NCBI RefSeq assembly: GCF_035594765.1
Contig: NW_026943821.1
Coordinates: 20,367,608-20,431,607, forward strand
DNA length: 64,000 bases
Reading direction: 5' to 3'
From: Anolis carolinensis
Lineage: Eukaryota
The position numbers were made by a program, and so were the translations under genes. Shown in pieces: positions 2 through 63,900 of this stretch. The notes beneath the pieces were generated by a model that saw only the letters and a program-made list of their open reading frames with translations, made no database searches and was not told the DNA's origin. The first letter of the stretch is position 1; each line of letters starts with the position of its first letter.

Positions 2-913
2 TAAAGACACCCGCAGGAATCGGTTGAGCTCTTGGAGCCCTCGGATTGATCTGTGTAACCGATCCCTTTGCTCTTCCTGGGGGTCTTTGCCATTGATTTC
101 TGCTGGAGAAGAGACTTCTTGGGAGGAAAGGCCCGGTGTTGGCTGGATGCTGGCGGCGTTTCGGACACAGCAGAGGAACTTCTGGGTTGCAATGGCCACC
201 GGATCCTGTTTGCAGAGAGGGCTGGAGGCTGTATCTTGGAGGCCCTCTTCTTCCGCAAGGGCTTCCTGCAATTCCTTGACCTTCCTCCTTAACCGGTCCC
301 TCTCTTCCTCGTAAACCAAGAGTGTCCCTTTGCAGTGTTGCAGCTCCTCATTCCGGATGCCCAGCTGCTTCTCGAGGGCCGCCTTCCTCTCCCGGCAAAG
401 GGCCACTTCTTGTCTGTAGACGATGCTCTCTGTCGACAGGAAGTCCAGATTCGGCGCAAAAGATTGCTGACTTTGGCAACCCTTTCGGGACCCCACTGGA
501 CTTTCACCAAAGTTCTCAGCCACATTGGGACTTTGCTCTGTTCCGGATCCAGCGCTGGGCCGACGGTTGCGGTGAGAGGAGACCGCGTTCTCGAGGGAGG
601 AGACTGCTTGGAGGGCAGCGAGGAAGAGGTCTGGATGCCTTTTCTCCGGAGGAGGCATCGTCGCTTCCAGGCTCAGAAACGGCACACTGCATCGTGGGAG
701 GCTTGCTGTATATTCAGAGCAGAGATCAGAAAACTCTTCCTCCTCCTGCTCCCTGTCTTTCTCCCGCTCGAGGCGTTGGAGGTGTTGGTGAAGGCGGGAG
801 ACCGTCACCAGCAGTGCTGTGATGCGCTCCTCGCAGCGAAGGGCTTCTCGCTCATCTGGTGGCAAAGCCTTTTCGGGGGATCCTTCTTCATCTCTGGATC
901 CTTCCTGCTCCAT
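2..913 (-). CDS. MCC (mutated in colorectal cancers)/USHBP1-family coiled-coil protein; single long exon, runs off the window start
   Basis: Hand translation from ATG at 913 (acceptor ttttcAG at 920-919) gives 304 codons with no stop: MEQEGSRDEE...LRCEERITALLVTVSRLHQHLQRLEREKDREQEEEEFSDLCSE...HPDLFLAALQAVSSLENAV...RNEELQHCKGTLLVYEEERDRLRRKVKELQEAL...RDRLHRSIRGLQELNRFLRVSL. These blocks are collinear with MCC motifs as I recall them (RYEERITELHSVIAEL, EEDEYSELRSE, EERDRLRRRVRELQ, ERLNSRIEHLKSQNDLLTITL). Confidence 0.8.
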   Translation of the reverse strand, partial: MEQEGSRDEEGSPEKALPPDEREALRCEERITALLVTVSRLHQHLQRLEREKDREQEEEEFSDLCSEYTASLPRCSVPFLSLEATMPPPEKRHPDLFLAALQAVSSLENAVSSHRNRRPSAGSGTEQSPNVAENFGESPVGSRKGCQSQQSFAPNLDFLSTESIVYRQEVALCRERKAALEKQLGIRNEELQHCKGTLLVYEEERDRLRRKVKELQEALAEEEGLQDTASSPLCKQDPVAIATQKFLCCVRNAASIQPTPGLSSQEVSSPAEINGKDPQEEQRDRLHRSIRGLQELNRFLRVSL

Positions 914-1076
914 TCTGTCTGAAAAGTGGCTCCAAAGGCGGACAGCAGCATCAAAACAAGCCAAAGCCCAGCCCTTTGGTTCCTGTTTCTTCCCATAATA
1001 ACAATAATAATGAGAAGCCTTTCCTGTCTTTCCAGAGAGGAAGGAAGCCGGCTCCATCCGCACCAATGCTTTAACC

Positions 1077-1240
1077 CAGGGGTCTCCAAACTTTTTAAAC
1101 GGGGCCAGTTCACAGTCCGTCAGTCCGTTGGAGGGCTGGACTATAGTTGGAAAAACCCTATAAAGAAATTCCTATGCACACTACATATCACTTATTTTGA
1201 AGTAAAAAACAAAAACAAATGGGAACAAATACAGCCTCAA
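1077..1240. mobile_element. hAT-type MITE, 5' part (CAGGGGT terminus)
   Basis: Starts cagggg-tctccaaactttttaaac, the same terminus as the complete copy at 44150-44577. Confidence 0.55.
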
Positions 1241-1524
1241 TGTTAATAATAATCATAATCATAATAAAAATAATAAAGAGGGTGGGAAGAGATCCCTTGG
1301 GCCATTTAGTCCAATCCCCTTCTACTTTTGTGCACCAAAAGCACAAGCAAAGCACCCCTGACAGATGCCACCAAGCCTCAATGTTGTTGGTAATAATCAT
1401 CATCATTATCATCACATAGTCCTAAACGCTTGGGAAGTGTTCAACTTGTGATTTTGTGATACGAAATCCAGCATATATTTCTCGTTTGCTGTGTTATACT
1501 GTGTCTTTGTGTCAATAATAATAA

Positions 1525-2889: not shown

Positions 2890-3245
2890 GGTTGCCGGGA
2901 AATGTAGTCCTCCGCCCCTCCTTGTTTGTTCTCCCGCCTCGCTCGCCGCTTTTCCCGCCCCGCCTCTGGCCTTTCCCAGCATGCCTTTCTCCGGCCTTCC
3001 CTCTGACTGGCTGGCGATGAGGGCGGCGCATGCGCAGTACCCAAAACCCGGGCCGGAGCCGCTTCCTCTTAACGCCGCCGCGAAGAGCAGAGCCGGGCGG
3101 CGGAAGAAGCGAAGGCAGCCGAAGCGAAGGGCCGCCAAGGGTTGCCTGCTCGTTCGGTGAGTGCCACGGCTCGCGCGCGTGACGTCAGAGCGGCCGGGGT
3201 GACGTCACTATTTACGTCGGTGACGCGAATAGAAAGCGCGGAAAT
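2890..3245. promoter_or_regulatory. CpG-island promoter of TXLNA, probably bidirectional; includes TXLNA non-coding exon 1 (donor GTGAGT at 3157)
   Basis: CpG-rich. ZNF143/SBS-type motif (reverse of gggaaatgtagtcc, about 2897-2910), GC boxes, NRF1 gcgcatgcgc (about 3026), ETS cggaag, CRE tgacgtca at about 3180 and 3200. Confidence 0.75.
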
Positions 3246-3402
3246 AGTCACTTTTGGGAACTGGTATTTTTAAAAATATATTTTTATTATTTATACTATT
3301 TTTTTAAAAAAATTATCATTCATATTATTCTTTAAAATATTATTATGATTGGGTTGCTATGAGTTTTCCGGGCTGTATGGCCATGTTCCAGAAGCACTCT
3401 CT

Positions 3403-7029: not shown

Positions 7030-17110
<10,081 letters not shown>

Positions 17111-20569: not shown

Positions 20570-21325
20570 ATTTTGATGGGACGAAACTAACAGAATGAAC
20601 TTCAACAGGGACAGATGCAAGATACTCCACTTAGGCAGAAAAAAATTAAATGAAAAGATACAGAATGGGGGGCACCACGTGTTAAAAAGATCTTGGAGTC
20701 CTCGTGGAGAACAAGTTAAACATGAGCCAACAATATGATGCAGGGGCAAAAAAAGCCAATGGGATTGTGGCCTGCGTAAATAAGAGTCTAGTGTCTTGAT
20801 CCAGGGAAGACATGCTATTCCTCTATTCTGCCTTGGTCAGACCACACCTGGAATCACACTGGGTCCAATTCTGGGCACCACAATTGAAGGGAGATGTTGG
20901 CAAGCTGGGATGTGTCCGGAAGAGGGTGAATAAAATGATCAAGGGTCAAGAACAAGCCTTATGAGGAGCGGCTTAAAGAGCTGGGCATGTTTAGCTGGAG
21001 AAGAGAAGGCTGAGAGGAGGCATGATGAGGACCATGGATCAAGATGTGAAGGGAAGTCATAGGAGGGAACAAGCTTGTTTTCTGCTGCCCTGGAGACTAC
21101 GACGCAGAACGTCTTCATTCTACAGAAAAGGAGATTCCACCTGAACATTAGGAAGAACTTCCTCGCTGTGAGAGTTGTTCAGCAGTGGAACTCTCTGCCC
21201 TGGATGTGGTTGCAGCTCCTTCTTTGGATGGCCATCTGTTGGAGGTCCTTTGAATGTGCTTTTCCTGCTTCTTGGCCGAATGGGGTTGGACTCACGAAAT
21301 CTCTTCCAAATGATGATTCTATAAT
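20570..21325 (+). mobile_element. Older, degenerate CR1 LINE 3' fragment
   Basis: Frameshifted homology to the 7447 copy (RMNFNRDRCKILHLG...[12 protein letters not shown]). Confidence 0.85.
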
Positions 21326-55994: not shown

Positions 55995-61104
<5,110 letters not shown>

Positions 61105-61333: not shown

Positions 61334-63900
61334 ATGGTGAGTCCCTCTCCGCCTGAAGACGTCCCTGAGTCGGTTTGGTGGCCAAATCCAGCCGGGTCTG
61401 GGCCTGGGCCTCTCCGTTGATGGCTTTGGAGCCTGGCCTGTTCCTGCTGTCCTTTTGGCTGCAGGCGAAAAGCCTTTGTATTCAGGCAGGCTGTTGAAAC
61501 GAAGTTTTGAGGCACAGGCCTTGGATTTGTCAATGTTTTGGAGCAGTTTGTGCCTTCCTCACTCTAATAAGGTTTTAACTCGGGCATAGGCAAACTTGGG
61601 CCCTCTCTCCAGGTGTTTTGGACTAACTCACACCATTCCTCACAGCCTCAGGCCCCTTCCTTTTCCCCCTCAGCCGCTTAAGCTTAAGTTTGCCCATGCC
61701 TGGTATAGAATATATAATTGTTTCAATTTGTTTGTCCACATCCAGTCCATTACGAATGACCGGCACTGGTTTAGGATCAGGACAGCTTCCTTGTCCATTA
61801 AAGAGGGGTTTAGGGATGGCTTTTTAAAATATAGACCCCACAACAATCAAAATAATAATTGGAATACAGTGTTCCCTCACTTATCGCAAGGTTCCAGGAC
61901 CACCCACAATAAGTGAAAATCCGTGAAGTAGGGACACTATATTTATTTTCATATTTATACATCATTTTAGTAGTTATACACTATTTTAAGTCTTTATCAA
62001 CCAACTGTGTGTTGATAAATTGCCGCCTCCTCCTCCTGTTGCCGCTTGGGCTTCTTTTTTCTCCCTTTGGCTTCTCCTTCCTCCCTTCCTTAGGCTGTAA
62101 ATTGTAATTTTTATGATTTATAATAGTCTTTTAGAGTTTATTGAAACACTGCGAAACAGCAAATCTGCGGAAAGTGAACCACGAAGTAGTGAGGGAACAC
62201 TGTAATAAGAAGAAGAATAGGAATGAGGTACTGTTCCATTATCTGAGAGGAATAATAATGATTATAGTAATAGTAATATATGAATAGGAATAATAATAAG
62301 AAGAAGAATAGGAATAATAATGGTAATAGGAATACTATTAATAATAGTAATAAGAATGGGAATATTAATGCTAATTGGAATGCTAATAGGAGCCTTCAGT
62401 GGCTCAGTGCGTTAAAGCACTGAGTTGCTGAACTTGCAGACTGAAAGGTCCCAGGTTCAAATCCAGGGAGCGGAGTGAGCGCCTGCTGTTAGCTCCAGCT
62501 TCTGCCAACCTAGCAGTTCGAAAACATGCAAATGTGAGTAGGTCAATAGGTACCGCTCCGGCGGGAAGGTAACAGCATTCCATGCAGTCATGCCAGTGGC
62601 CACATGACCTTGGAGGTGTCTATGGACAATGCCGGCTCTTCGGCTTAGAAATGGAGATGAGCACCAACCCACAGAGTCGGACACGACTGGACTTAACGTC
62701 AGGGGAAACCTTTAACTTTACCTTTAGGAATAACAGGAAAAAGAACTAGAGTACGAATAGGAATAATAATGATAATAAGAATAGTAGGAATACTACTAAT
62801 AAAAGGAATAATACGAATATGAATAAAAATAAAAAATAGGTATAAATTTACAACTGTTTGTGTTTCTTTCCATGTATCTTATAGAATATTTAATTTATAT
62901 GATACATGTTATCATGTTGTCGCTTGGTGTGCTATGTTTTATAAGAAATGTGCTGCTATTTATACCTTCTAAAAGCATTAAAAATAGATACAGCTTCACA
63001 GATTCAAAAAATAAAAACAGAGATAGAAATGAAAGCTCTACAAGGCAATATAGTTCAAAGACTTGTTAAAGCACATTGTTCTTTTCTTCCCACAGAAACC
63101 TATCCTCTTGCAGGGCCATGAGCGGTCGATTACCCAGATCAAATATAACAGGGAAGGAGATCTGCTTTTCACAGTCGCCAAAGATCCGGTAATGATTTTC
63201 TGGATCCTCCCCAACTTCTATATAAAGGAATTGAAAATCACTAATGTTATGATGTTCTGTTCCTCTCCTGGATGTGCTTCATTATGTTTTAATGACGCAG
63301 CCCAATCTATGAATTCTTCTTCTCCCAGATTGTTAACGTTTGGTACTCTGTCAACGGCGAGAGGCTTGGCACATACAATGGGCACACAGGAGCCGTCTGG
63401 TGCGTCGATGCTGACTGTATCCTTTGTCTTTAGGAAGCAAGCATGCTATTAAGACACAGATTTTCATTAATAAGACTGAGACAACTCTCAAGGTTCAGAG
63501 ACTCAGCATCTGGAGAGACTAGTTCAGTAACGGGCCCAACATTCATTTTTATTGCAGATCTTGCTTTGGATTAACTTTTATGGATTCTGATAAGTAATTG
63601 TGGGGCATAAAAAACTCTACAGGCCATAAGACTTGCATCAGATGGACTGATAAATCCATGAGTGAGAATATACAAGTGAATTGAGATGCAGTGGGTTATA
63701 CAAACCGGTTAATTGGAAGAATTAACATCGTACCATCTTTTGGATGCGTTGTCTAGATATTGATCTCTTGCAGTAGCTCATACTTTCTTCTGTACTGATA
63801 TAATGCGATGGGAGTTCCTTGACTGCTCCTTCAGGGGACACAAGGCATGTACTGACCGGCTCTGCGGACAACTCCTGTCGGCTCTGGGATTGTGAGACAG
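61334..63900 (+). CDS. EIF3I: Eukaryotic translation initiation factor 3 subunit I, exons 1-4 (continues beyond window)
   Basis: Exons 61334-61336 (ATG only), 63096-63188, 63329-63416, 63835-63900: M|[31 protein letters not shown]|[29 protein letters not shown]|[22 protein letters not shown]. Confidence 0.97.
63417..63834 (+). other. U12-type GT-AG intron of EIF3I
   Basis: 5'SS GTATCCTTT; branch point TTCCTTGAC at 63815-63823, 11 nt from the AG. Confidence 0.92.

What the first reader, a model, noticed from the sequence alone, without database searches (positions are those of the whole stretch)
2..920. Hidden intronless MCC-like gene head-to-head with TXLNA (candidate retrogene)
Seen: a minus-strand frame from ATG 913 stays open for 304 codons to the window edge. 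It is absent from the ORF track and is preceded by a splice acceptor 5 nt upstream of the ATG. Its coiled-coil blocks follow MCC in order (EERIT, EEFSDL, DL..LENAV, EERDRLRRKVKELQ, RL..I..L..LN..L). Known: in MCC and USHBP1 this span is split over several exons, both genes lie in other syntenic blocks, and the human neighbour of TXLNA here is KPNA6. Inference: an old, diverged but still open retrocopy or third MCC paralog that gained a 5'UTR intron and is absent from the mammalian locus. High divergence with no stops suggests purifying selection.
Basis: partly seen in the sequence, partly recalled or inferred. Interest (0 to 1): 0.8.

Follow-up and report, generated by a model that had tools for sequence, protein, structure and literature searches.

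The report
Lizard USHBP1 is an orphan retrogene
The open frame is the start of the green anole's only USHBP1 gene: an intron-free copy made from spliced mRNA that landed between KPNA6 and TXLNA, while the original 16-exon gene was deleted from its old place; this is a clean but ordinary kind of gene relocation.

Summary
The minus-strand frame from ATG 913 is open to the window edge. In the same assembly (GCA_035594765.1, Anolis carolinensis) it continues to a 683-codon ORF.

It is not a hidden or third MCC paralog. NCBI already annotates it as USHBP1 (XP_008120703.1). On a tree it is sister to Anolis sagrei USHBP1 (79% aa, 87% nt) inside the squamate USHBP1 clade.

A. sagrei, Sceloporus and alligator USHBP1 are multi-exon and lie head-to-head with BABAM1. 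The A. carolinensis copy is colinear with all 16 A. sagrei coding exons plus UTR ends. It lacks all 15 introns exactly at the splice junctions and sits between KPNA6 and TXLNA.

At the ancestral BABAM1 locus of A. carolinensis, about 28 kb holding the whole parent gene is missing and no exon remnant is left.

Evidence of constraint:
- dN/dS is 0.40 (CI 0.31-0.53).
- All 7 indels are in frame.
- The protein rate equals that of the intron-bearing ortholog.

So this is an orphan retrogene, constrained and probably functional.

Not shown: transcription (the one read-laying run failed), the proposed 5'UTR intron, a poly(A) tail or target-site duplication, and the state of this interval in other anoles.

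The scan noted the same stretch before in an overlapping window (s1-519651).

The parts
2..913 (-). Codons 1-304 of the intronless USHBP1 retrogene. The ORF continues beyond the window edge to 683 codons (L004 10145-12196).
   Evidence: Open frame. 100% identical to residues 49-352 of P0032, the protein called on this genome. The Pfam USHBP1_PDZ-bd domain starts at residue 285.
50..905 (-). Seven former intron sites, now seamless exon-exon junctions. The last base of each upstream exon is at window 905, 753, 640, 521, 281, 206 and 51.
   Evidence: A. sagrei exon boundaries, all GT-AG, mapped through the codon alignment. Exon-by-exon blastn is colinear.
914..1077 (-). Part of the retrocopy derived from the parental 5'UTR. 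It contains a lineage-specific in-frame upstream ATG at 1055-1057, used as the start in the 731-aa RefSeq model.
   Evidence: 88% identical to A. sagrei L003 9838-10000, directly upstream of its start codon. A. sagrei has ATA TAG where A. carolinensis has ATG GAG.
1078..1358 (.). Interspersed-repeat copies abutting the 5' end of the retrocopy. Homology to the parental mRNA stops here.
   Evidence: Other copies lie at window 44151-44362 and 30063-30206 and at L003 35973-36271. The repeat's own end coincides with about 1071-1077.
2900..3250 (.). CpG island (GC 0.70, CpG o/e 1.16). It is the presumed TXLNA promoter and first exon, and a candidate bidirectional promoter for the retrogene.
   Evidence: Composition only. 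Function is inferred.
7030..7230 (+). First coding exon of TXLNA (MKNQ...). The exon end is approximate.
   Evidence: ORF 7030-7317. The called Taxilin gene reaches this position in L004.
11138..17107 (+). Further TXLNA coding exons: 11138-11314, 11556-11759, 14987-15085 and 16829-about 17100.
   Evidence: Pfam Taxilin PF09728 hits exon by exon, E 3e-18, 1e-19, 2e-9 and 1e-3.

Best explanation
The frame is the 5' part of the only USHBP1 gene (harmonin-binding protein, MCC2) found in Anolis carolinensis.

In the lineage leading to this species, a fully spliced USHBP1 mRNA was reverse-transcribed and inserted into the KPNA6-TXLNA intergenic interval. It lies antisense to both neighbours, about 2 kb from the TXLNA CpG island. 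The mRNA ran from the 5'UTR through all 16 coding exons to at least 100 nt of 3'UTR. The copy kept the whole 683-codon reading frame.

The intron-bearing parent lay head-to-head with BABAM1. It was later removed by a deletion of about 28 kb. The retrocopy therefore now stands in for the gene, which makes it an 'orphan' retrogene.

Shown here: intron loss at exact junctions, relocation, absence of the parent at the ancestral locus, an intact ORF, and dN/dS below 1 with no rate acceleration.

Inferred: that it is transcribed, most likely by borrowing the TXLNA bidirectional promoter or a promoter in the adjacent repeat. Also inferred: that translation starts at the conserved ATG 913 rather than the lineage-specific ATG 1057, and that the protein keeps the ancestral USHBP1 role.
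For: Identity of the gene:
- The window fragment equals residues 49-352 of P0032, called on GCA_035594765.1.
- Its 99%-identical cluster mate is XP_008120703.1, 'USHBP1 [Anolis carolinensis]'.
- PF10506 scores 55 bits against a cut-off of 24.5.
- The tree follows the species tree. The protein is sister to A. sagrei USHBP1 (SH-aLRT 100), inside Pleurodonta and Iguania.

Processed origin:
- A. sagrei USHBP1 has 16 coding exons and 15 GT-AG introns over 25 kb.
- The A. carolinensis locus matches every exon in order at 80-94% nt identity with no intervening sequence. The match includes 163 nt of 5'UTR and about 100 nt of 3'UTR.

Ancestral state:
- USHBP1 is multi-exon and next to BABAM1 in alligator, A. 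sagrei and Sceloporus, where the order is ANKLE1-BABAM1-USHBP1-nuclear receptor.

New location:
- The gene lies between a Taxilin gene and an importin-alpha gene whose last exon is closest to importin alpha-7 (KPNA6).
- It is on a different scaffold from BABAM1.

Loss of the parent:
- In the A. carolinensis ANKLE1-BABAM1-RFX locus, the BABAM1-RFX gap is 7.2 kb, against 40 kb in A. sagrei.
- tblastn finds no USHBP1 remnant there (best E 0.065).
- The flanks are colinear. A. sagrei L003 about 8744-36737 is replaced by about 28 bp.
- No second A. carolinensis USHBP1 protein appears in either protein search.

Constraint:
- dN/dS is 0.40 (bootstrap CI 0.31-0.53) and dS is 0.27. All 7 indels are multiples of three.
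- Unique amino-acid changes number 32 (A. carolinensis) against 26 (A. sagrei), p=0.51.
- Under neutrality, a 694-codon frame survives 5% substitutions with P=0.024 and 10% with P<0.001.

Reality of the locus:
- It is present in two independent assemblies.
- It is held by 20 runs from 9 studies.
Against: - No transcript evidence.
- The run table names no confirmed RNA holder. Three small 'RNA?' runs (58-81 million letters) hold 80-86% of the words, which is only suggestive.
- No poly(A) tail and no target-site duplication can be recognised. Both ends abut repeats.
- The age of the insertion is bounded only from above, because dS to A. sagrei is no larger than neutral divergence. If the copy is very young, the intact frame and the pairwise dN/dS mostly reflect the parent's history.
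- Two A. carolinensis individuals differ at 9 of 731 residues. This is high and could hint at weak constraint.
- Absence of the parent was shown at the ancestral locus and in the annotated proteomes, not by a whole-genome search.
Confidence: 0.8

Rival explanations
1. It is a third, ancient MCC/USHBP1-family paralog (an ohnolog beside TXLNA) that mammals lost.
For: It lies in a block different from MCC and USHBP1. The N-terminal 304 aa give no Pfam hit on their own. The word search found only 32-39% identical relatives.
Against: - The low identities came from the length filter of the word search.
- The exhaustive search gives A. sagrei USHBP1 at 80% identity.
- The tree nests it inside squamate USHBP1 as sister to A. 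sagrei.
- Every A. sagrei exon matches at 80-94% nt identity.
- dS is only 0.27.
- No other USHBP1 exists in this genome's annotation or at the BABAM1 locus.
Confidence: 0.01
2. It is a non-functional processed pseudogene that has not yet decayed. Under this reading A. carolinensis has in effect lost USHBP1.
For: - No expression data could be obtained.
- A retrocopy carries no promoter of its own, and repeats flank it.
- There are 9 amino-acid differences between two individuals.
- USHBP1 evolves fast in squamates generally.
Against: - The 683-codon frame is intact and all 7 indels are in frame.
- dN/dS is 0.40, with an upper bound of 0.53.
- There is no excess of amino-acid change relative to the intron-bearing A. 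sagrei gene.
- Poly(A) and target-site duplications have eroded and a MITE-like element sits in the 3'UTR. This argues the copy is not very young, and an old neutral copy would carry stops.
- Small, probably RNA, runs hold most of its words.
Confidence: 0.1
3. The mechanism is the same but the timing is older. Retroposition predates the A. carolinensis / A. sagrei split. The two lineages then lost reciprocal copies: A. sagrei lost the retrocopy and A. carolinensis lost the parent.
For: The A. sagrei KPNA6-TXLNA interval could not be fetched, so absence of a retrocopy or its relic there is not shown. The Anolis stem branch of the USHBP1 tree is long (0.55).
Against: - dS between the retrocopy and the A. 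sagrei parent (0.27, CI 0.22-0.33) does not exceed orthologous non-coding divergence at the BABAM1 locus (76-80% identity). It is below BABAM1 dS (0.61, noisy, 123 codons).
- No second USHBP1-like protein is annotated in A. sagrei.
Confidence: 0.12
4. It is an assembly artefact, with cDNA or transcript sequence wrongly placed in the genome.
For: An intronless full-length copy that matches an mRNA is what contamination would look like.
Against: - The same 731-aa ORF was predicted from the older, independent assembly, with 9 substitutions.
- 20 runs from 9 studies hold 79-100% of its words, including genome-sized DNA runs.
- It is embedded in contiguous sequence between TXLNA and KPNA6 with no N.
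- No intron-bearing source gene exists in this genome.
Confidence: 0.01

Closest known systems
USHBP1 (harmonin-binding protein, MCC2) of Anolis sagrei, XP_060642121.1 / XP_067329153.1
   Same: 79% amino-acid and 87% nucleotide identity over the full length. Colinear through all 16 coding exons. Same single PF10506 domain at the same position. Same non-PDZ-ligand C-terminus.
   Different: The A. sagrei gene has 15 introns, spans 25 kb and sits head-to-head with BABAM1. The A. carolinensis gene has none, spans 2 kb and sits between KPNA6 and TXLNA on another scaffold.
'Orphan' retrogenes, meaning retrocopies that replaced their progenitors (Ciomborowska et al. 2013, PMC3548309; also treated in Carelli et al. 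2016, PMC4772013)
   Same: A processed copy at a new locus, the parental gene lost, the copy annotated and treated as the ordinary gene, and purifying selection on the copy.
   Different: The loss is specific to a lineage within one lizard genus, with the intron-bearing state still present in a congener. Both events can therefore be bracketed and the deletion breakpoints can be seen. Expression is not yet documented here.
MCC (mutated in colorectal cancer)
   Different: It is not the nearest relative. The exhaustive search with the 304-aa fragment returned USHBP1 orthologs. The only 'MCC-like' names among the hits whose names were looked up were a lungfish and a caecilian entry that group with USHBP1.

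Membership tests
USHBP1 / MCC2 orthologous group | PF10506 (USHBP1_PDZ-bd) domain above Pfam's gathering score | tested here: met
   55.4 bits against a cut-off of 24.5, at residues 285-348 of the 683-aa protein. Residues 285-304 lie in the window.
USHBP1 / MCC2 orthologous group | Phylogenetic placement inside the USHBP1 clade, following the species tree | tested here: met
   Sister to A. sagrei USHBP1 (SH-aLRT 100) and nested with Sceloporus + Phrynosoma (99). This is the quick IQ-TREE tree; the careful search did not finish.
USHBP1 / MCC2 orthologous group | Positional orthology: head-to-head with BABAM1 and upstream of NR2F6 | tested here: not met
   The gene lies between KPNA6 and TXLNA on another scaffold. 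This is explained by relocation. It does not bear on sequence orthology.
USHBP1 / MCC2 orthologous group | C-terminal class-I PDZ ligand (ETSL/ETCI type) | tested here: not met
   The protein ends in ...GSGEQP. The motif is present in echidna, salamanders and crocodilians. It is absent from all 16 squamate sequences compared, so this is not a property of the retrocopy.
USHBP1 / MCC2 orthologous group | Binding to harmonin PDZ1 | not testable with these tools
   Needs a binding assay.
Processed retrocopy / retrogene | All parental introns absent exactly at the splice junctions | tested here: met
   15 of 15 A. sagrei GT-AG introns are missing with seamless junctions, 7 of them inside the window.
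Processed retrocopy / retrogene | Homology limited to the mRNA (UTR to UTR) at a locus unlinked to the parent | tested here: met
   Homology runs from the 5'UTR (window 1077) to about 100 nt past the stop (L004 12296). The flanks are unrelated to the parental flanks apart from dispersed repeats.
Processed retrocopy / retrogene | Poly(A) tract at the 3' end | tested here: not met
   No run of 6 or more A within 1.8 kb downstream. The 3'UTR homology ends at a MITE-like insertion.
Processed retrocopy / retrogene | Target-site duplications | tested here: inconclusive
   No shared word longer than 8 nt between the 5' flank and 1.8 kb of 3' flank. The true 3' end is not defined.
Processed retrocopy / retrogene | Functional retrogene: intact ORF under purifying selection | tested here: met
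   683 codons with no stop, 7 indels all in frame, dN/dS 0.40 (CI 0.31-0.53), and no rate excess against the A. sagrei ortholog.
Processed retrocopy / retrogene | Functional retrogene: transcribed | not tested
The only hint is word holdings in small 'RNA?' runs.
Orphan retrogene | Parental gene absent from the genome | tested here: met
   The ancestral BABAM1-RFX interval is 7.2 kb, colinear with A. sagrei except for the 28-kb USHBP1 segment, and has no exon remnant. No second annotated protein was found. A whole-genome nucleotide search was not possible.
Third MCC-family paralog | A separate clade outside both MCC and USHBP1, co-existing with both in one genome | tested here: not met
   It nests within USHBP1. 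No other USHBP1 was found in this genome.

The most novel reading that the evidence does not exclude
The relocation rewired the gene. The retrogene would be driven by the TXLNA CpG-island promoter acting bidirectionally, through a newly recruited non-coding exon spliced to the AG at window 919-918. Alternatively, transcription from the adjacent repeat would include the lineage-specific ATG 1057 and add 48 new N-terminal residues. Either way, A. carolinensis would express USHBP1 in a pattern or form different from anoles that keep the BABAM1-linked gene. With A. sagrei as the unaltered control, this would be a natural experiment on regulatory replacement of a conserved gene within one genus.
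Probability: 0.3. Interest if true: 0.45.

Novelty: new member of a known kind. Interest (0 to 1): 0.35.

Why it matters
Replacement of a gene by its own retrocopy is a known route of gene relocation, so the phenomenon itself is not new.

The value here is in how clean and well bracketed the case is:
- A congener (A. sagrei) keeps the 16-exon gene at the ancestral BABAM1 locus.
- The model lizard A. carolinensis has only the intronless copy beside TXLNA.
- The deletion scar of the parent is still readable.

This permits dating of both events across the anole radiation. It also permits a direct test of how a retrocopy acquires regulation good enough to let the parent be lost.

On the practical side, the RefSeq entry named USHBP1 in A. 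carolinensis has a different regulatory context and no introns. Its annotated first 48 residues are probably 5'UTR. Synteny-based orthology pipelines will mis-handle it.

I found no paper that links USHBP1 with Anolis or with retrogenes.

Tried and rejected
- Pfam on the 304-aa fragment alone gave only sub-threshold coiled-coil noise.
- The first word search was blinded by its length filter and returned two distant fragments.
No letters of 3259-3295 were sent to any search tool afterwards. The only later use of that stretch was a local GC/CpG count.
- The look-up of encoding contigs had no record for P0006 (Hemicordylus), P0045 (older A. carolinensis model) or P0033. A synonymous/non-synonymous polymorphism count between the two A. 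carolinensis assemblies was therefore not possible.
- The search for a poly(A) tract and target-site duplications was negative.
- The attempt to extend 3'UTR homology past the MITE-like and SINE insertions found nothing.
- The attempt to use the 5' flanking repeat as an interrupted target failed, because the repeat ends naturally at the junction.
- BABAM1 dS as a species-divergence yardstick is noisy (123 codons, mostly the GC-rich exon 1) and was used only as a one-sided check.
- The careful IQ-TREE search did not finish in the time limit, so the quick tree (SH-aLRT only) is reported.
- The A. sagrei KPNA6-TXLNA interval could not be reached. TXLNA, BABAM1 and KPNA6 were searched exon by exon by reference.
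- The A. sagrei USHBP1 coding sequence was joined only inside a local script for the codon alignment. It was checked to translate exactly to P0025.
- In-situ intron loss was considered and rejected. The old locus shows a deletion, not an intronless gene, and the new locus carries only mRNA-bounded sequence.

Full report
**What is in the window**

Read on the minus strand, the frame from ATG 913 to base 2 is open for 304 codons. The ORF listing omits it only because it runs off the window. The region has 56% GC, so a chance open frame of this length is expected about once in 1e5 frames.

On the plus strand, TXLNA is confirmed exon by exon. Its first coding exon is at about 7030, and Pfam Taxilin hits fall at 11138-11314, 11556-11759, 14987-15085 and 16829-17107. 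Its CpG island lies at about 2900-3250. The two genes are head-to-head, about 2 kb apart.

**Identity**

The fragment alone gives no Pfam hit. The length-limited word search found only an alligator USHBP1 fragment and a Logan contig.

The exhaustive HMMER search found 22 relatives, the best being Anolis sagrei USHBP1 at 80% identity. A second word search with that protein returned P0032 (731 aa), listed as encoded by the window's own genome. The window fragment is 100% identical to its residues 49-352. Its cluster mate is XP_008120703.1, 'Usher syndrome type-1C protein-binding protein 1 [Anolis carolinensis]', which differs at 9 of 731 residues.

So the gene is already annotated as USHBP1, and the genome is A. 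carolinensis assembly GCA_035594765.1. The full protein from ATG 913 has 683 residues and one PF10506 domain.

The extra 48 N-terminal residues of the RefSeq model come from an in-frame ATG at window 1057. This lies inside sequence homologous to the A. sagrei 5'UTR, where A. sagrei reads ATA TAG. They are probably not ancestral coding sequence.

**Locus**

L004 is the same locus extended beyond the window (L004 x = window 11058-x; zero mismatches over the overlap). It shows three genes in this order:
- A Taxilin gene, head-to-head with the ORF.
- The single-exon ORF, at L004 10001-12196.
- An importin-alpha gene, tail-to-tail with the ORF. Its last exon is closest to importin alpha-7 (KPNA6).

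The gene therefore sits inside the KPNA6-TXLNA interval.

**Processed origin**

The A. sagrei gene (L003) spans 25 kb. I reconstructed 16 coding exons with 15 GT-AG introns that translate exactly to P0025. This joining was done only in a local script.

blastn of the A. carolinensis locus against L003 gives one colinear chain. It runs from 163 nt of 5'UTR through each exon in turn to about 100 nt of 3'UTR. Identity is 80-94%, and adjacent exons abut in A. carolinensis. For example, ATGGAGCAG|gtaagg...cgcag|GAAGGATCC in A. sagrei reads ATGGAGCAGGAAGGATCC here.

Seven of the former intron sites fall in the window, at 905, 753, 640, 521, 281, 206 and 51.

Alligator USHBP1 is split in the same span, and so is Sceloporus USHBP1. 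The multi-exon state is therefore ancestral.

No poly(A) tract or target-site duplication is recognisable, and both ends abut repeats.

**Ancestral location and loss of the parent**

USHBP1 lies beside BABAM1 in three other species:
- Alligator: head-to-head with a gene whose last exon matches PDB BABAM1 chains at E 1e-29.
- A. sagrei: the neighbour is BABAM1, as protein P0052.
- Sceloporus: the order is ANKLE1-BABAM1-USHBP1-nuclear receptor.

I fetched the A. carolinensis BABAM1 locus (L005; same assembly, another scaffold). It reads ANKLE1-BABAM1-7.2 kb-RFX.

tblastn with both USHBP1 proteins finds nothing there (best E 0.065). The flanks are colinear with A. sagrei on both sides. A. sagrei L003 about 8744-36737, which holds the whole gene, corresponds to about 28 bp at L005 7593-7620. 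The junction segment is single-copy in the roughly 170 kb of anole sequence at hand.

The parent has therefore been deleted. No second A. carolinensis USHBP1 protein exists in the collections searched.

**Not a third paralog**

The tree of 25 USHBP1 proteins follows the species tree. The window protein is sister to A. sagrei (SH-aLRT 100). Its terminal branch is 0.16, against 0.11 for A. sagrei (quick search only).

**Constraint and timing**

Against A. sagrei:
- Amino-acid identity is 79% and nucleotide identity 87%.
- dN is 0.110 and dS 0.273, so dN/dS is 0.40 (bootstrap 0.31-0.53).
- All seven indels are in frame.

If the A. carolinensis branch were neutral, its dN alone (about dS/2 = 0.136) would exceed the total dN observed.

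Relative-rate counts with Sceloporus + Phrynosoma as outgroup are 32 against 26 (p=0.51).

Simulated neutral substitution leaves the frame open with P=0.024 at 5% and P<0.001 at 10%.

The dS does not exceed orthologous non-coding divergence at the BABAM1 locus (76-80% identity), and it is below BABAM1 dS (0.61, noisy). So retroposition is not older than about the A. carolinensis / A. sagrei split. How recent it is remains open.

**Expression**

This was not tested. The look-up of sequencing runs lists 20 holders from 9 studies, all of one organism, and none is on record as RNA. Three small runs guessed to be RNA hold 80-86% of the words.

**Literature**

No paper in the library links USHBP1 to Anolis or to retrogenes. 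The MCC-family evolution paper does not mention reptiles, introns or synteny. The concept of orphan retrogenes is established (PMC3548309; PMC4772013).

**Verdict**

The gene is neither hidden, nor ancient, nor a third paralog. It is the USHBP1 of A. carolinensis, relocated by retroposition, with the parent deleted. This is a new, well-bracketed example of a known process and of moderate interest.

Noticed in passing
protein C-termini; window gene end at L004 12194: The class-I PDZ-ligand tail (ETSL/ETCI/ETPI) of USHBP1 is present in echidna, salamanders, crocodilians and lungfish. It is absent from all 16 squamate sequences compared.
   Followed up: partly
L003 44798-45006; L005 1-2783; L006 17818-25757: In both anoles the gene downstream of the USHBP1 position is an RFX-family gene. 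In Sceloporus it is a nuclear receptor (zf-C4 + Hormone_recep; NR2F6 by position). The anole lineage therefore had a rearrangement at this locus before the USHBP1 deletion.
   Followed up: no
P0006 / P0026 (Hemicordylus capensis XP_053150941.1, XP_053150939.1): RefSeq models named 'NR2F6 isoform X4/X2' carry a USHBP1 N-terminal part of about 600 aa. They look like read-through fusion models of the adjacent USHBP1 and NR2F6 genes.
   Followed up: no
P0030 (Rhinatrema XP_029470546.1) and P0019 (Protopterus XP_043946571.1): These entries are named 'colorectal mutant cancer protein-like', yet they cluster or group with USHBP1. This is a naming inconsistency that can mislead MCC/USHBP1 surveys.
   Followed up: no
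L004 12297-12445 (outside the window, in the 3'UTR of the retrogene): A MITE-like insertion with perfect 16-nt terminal inverted repeats (CATGGGCCAACTTGGG ... CCCAAGTTGGCCCATG) sits exactly where 3'UTR homology to A. sagrei ends. A. sagrei has a different SINE-like insertion at the same point.
   Followed up: partly
L005 6140-7106 and 7813-8868: Two tandem arrays lie upstream of A. carolinensis BABAM1, next to the deletion scar. One has a period of about 34 nt and the other has units of about 63-75 nt. The scar segment itself (7421-7733) is GC-rich with CCAAT, GC-box, CRE and ETS-like motifs and ends in a GT donor. It probably holds the promoter and non-coding exon 1 of BABAM1.
   Followed up: no
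P0032 vs P0045: There are nine amino-acid differences in 731 residues between the two A. carolinensis assemblies' versions of this gene. Only one lies in the window part (D to Y at residue 277 of the 683-aa protein). This is high for within-species variation.
   Followed up: no
window 7448-8137, 20575-21326, 29185-29608: CR1-type LINE 3' fragments with a reverse-transcriptase C-terminal ORF, one of them in a TXLNA intron. A roughly 260-nt SINE occurs at least 8 times in the window (for example 58851-59108 and 62458-62718).
   Followed up: no
window 11971-12101 and 25885-26019: Two runs of N (131 and 135 bases).
   Followed up: no
The places were not examined or searched further.
   Followed up: no
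L003/L005 BABAM1 exons: BABAM1 dS between the two anoles is 0.61 over 123 codons, more than twice the USHBP1 dS of 0.27. It is dominated by the GC-rich, low-complexity exon 1. This may reflect alignment or mutation-rate heterogeneity.
   Followed up: no
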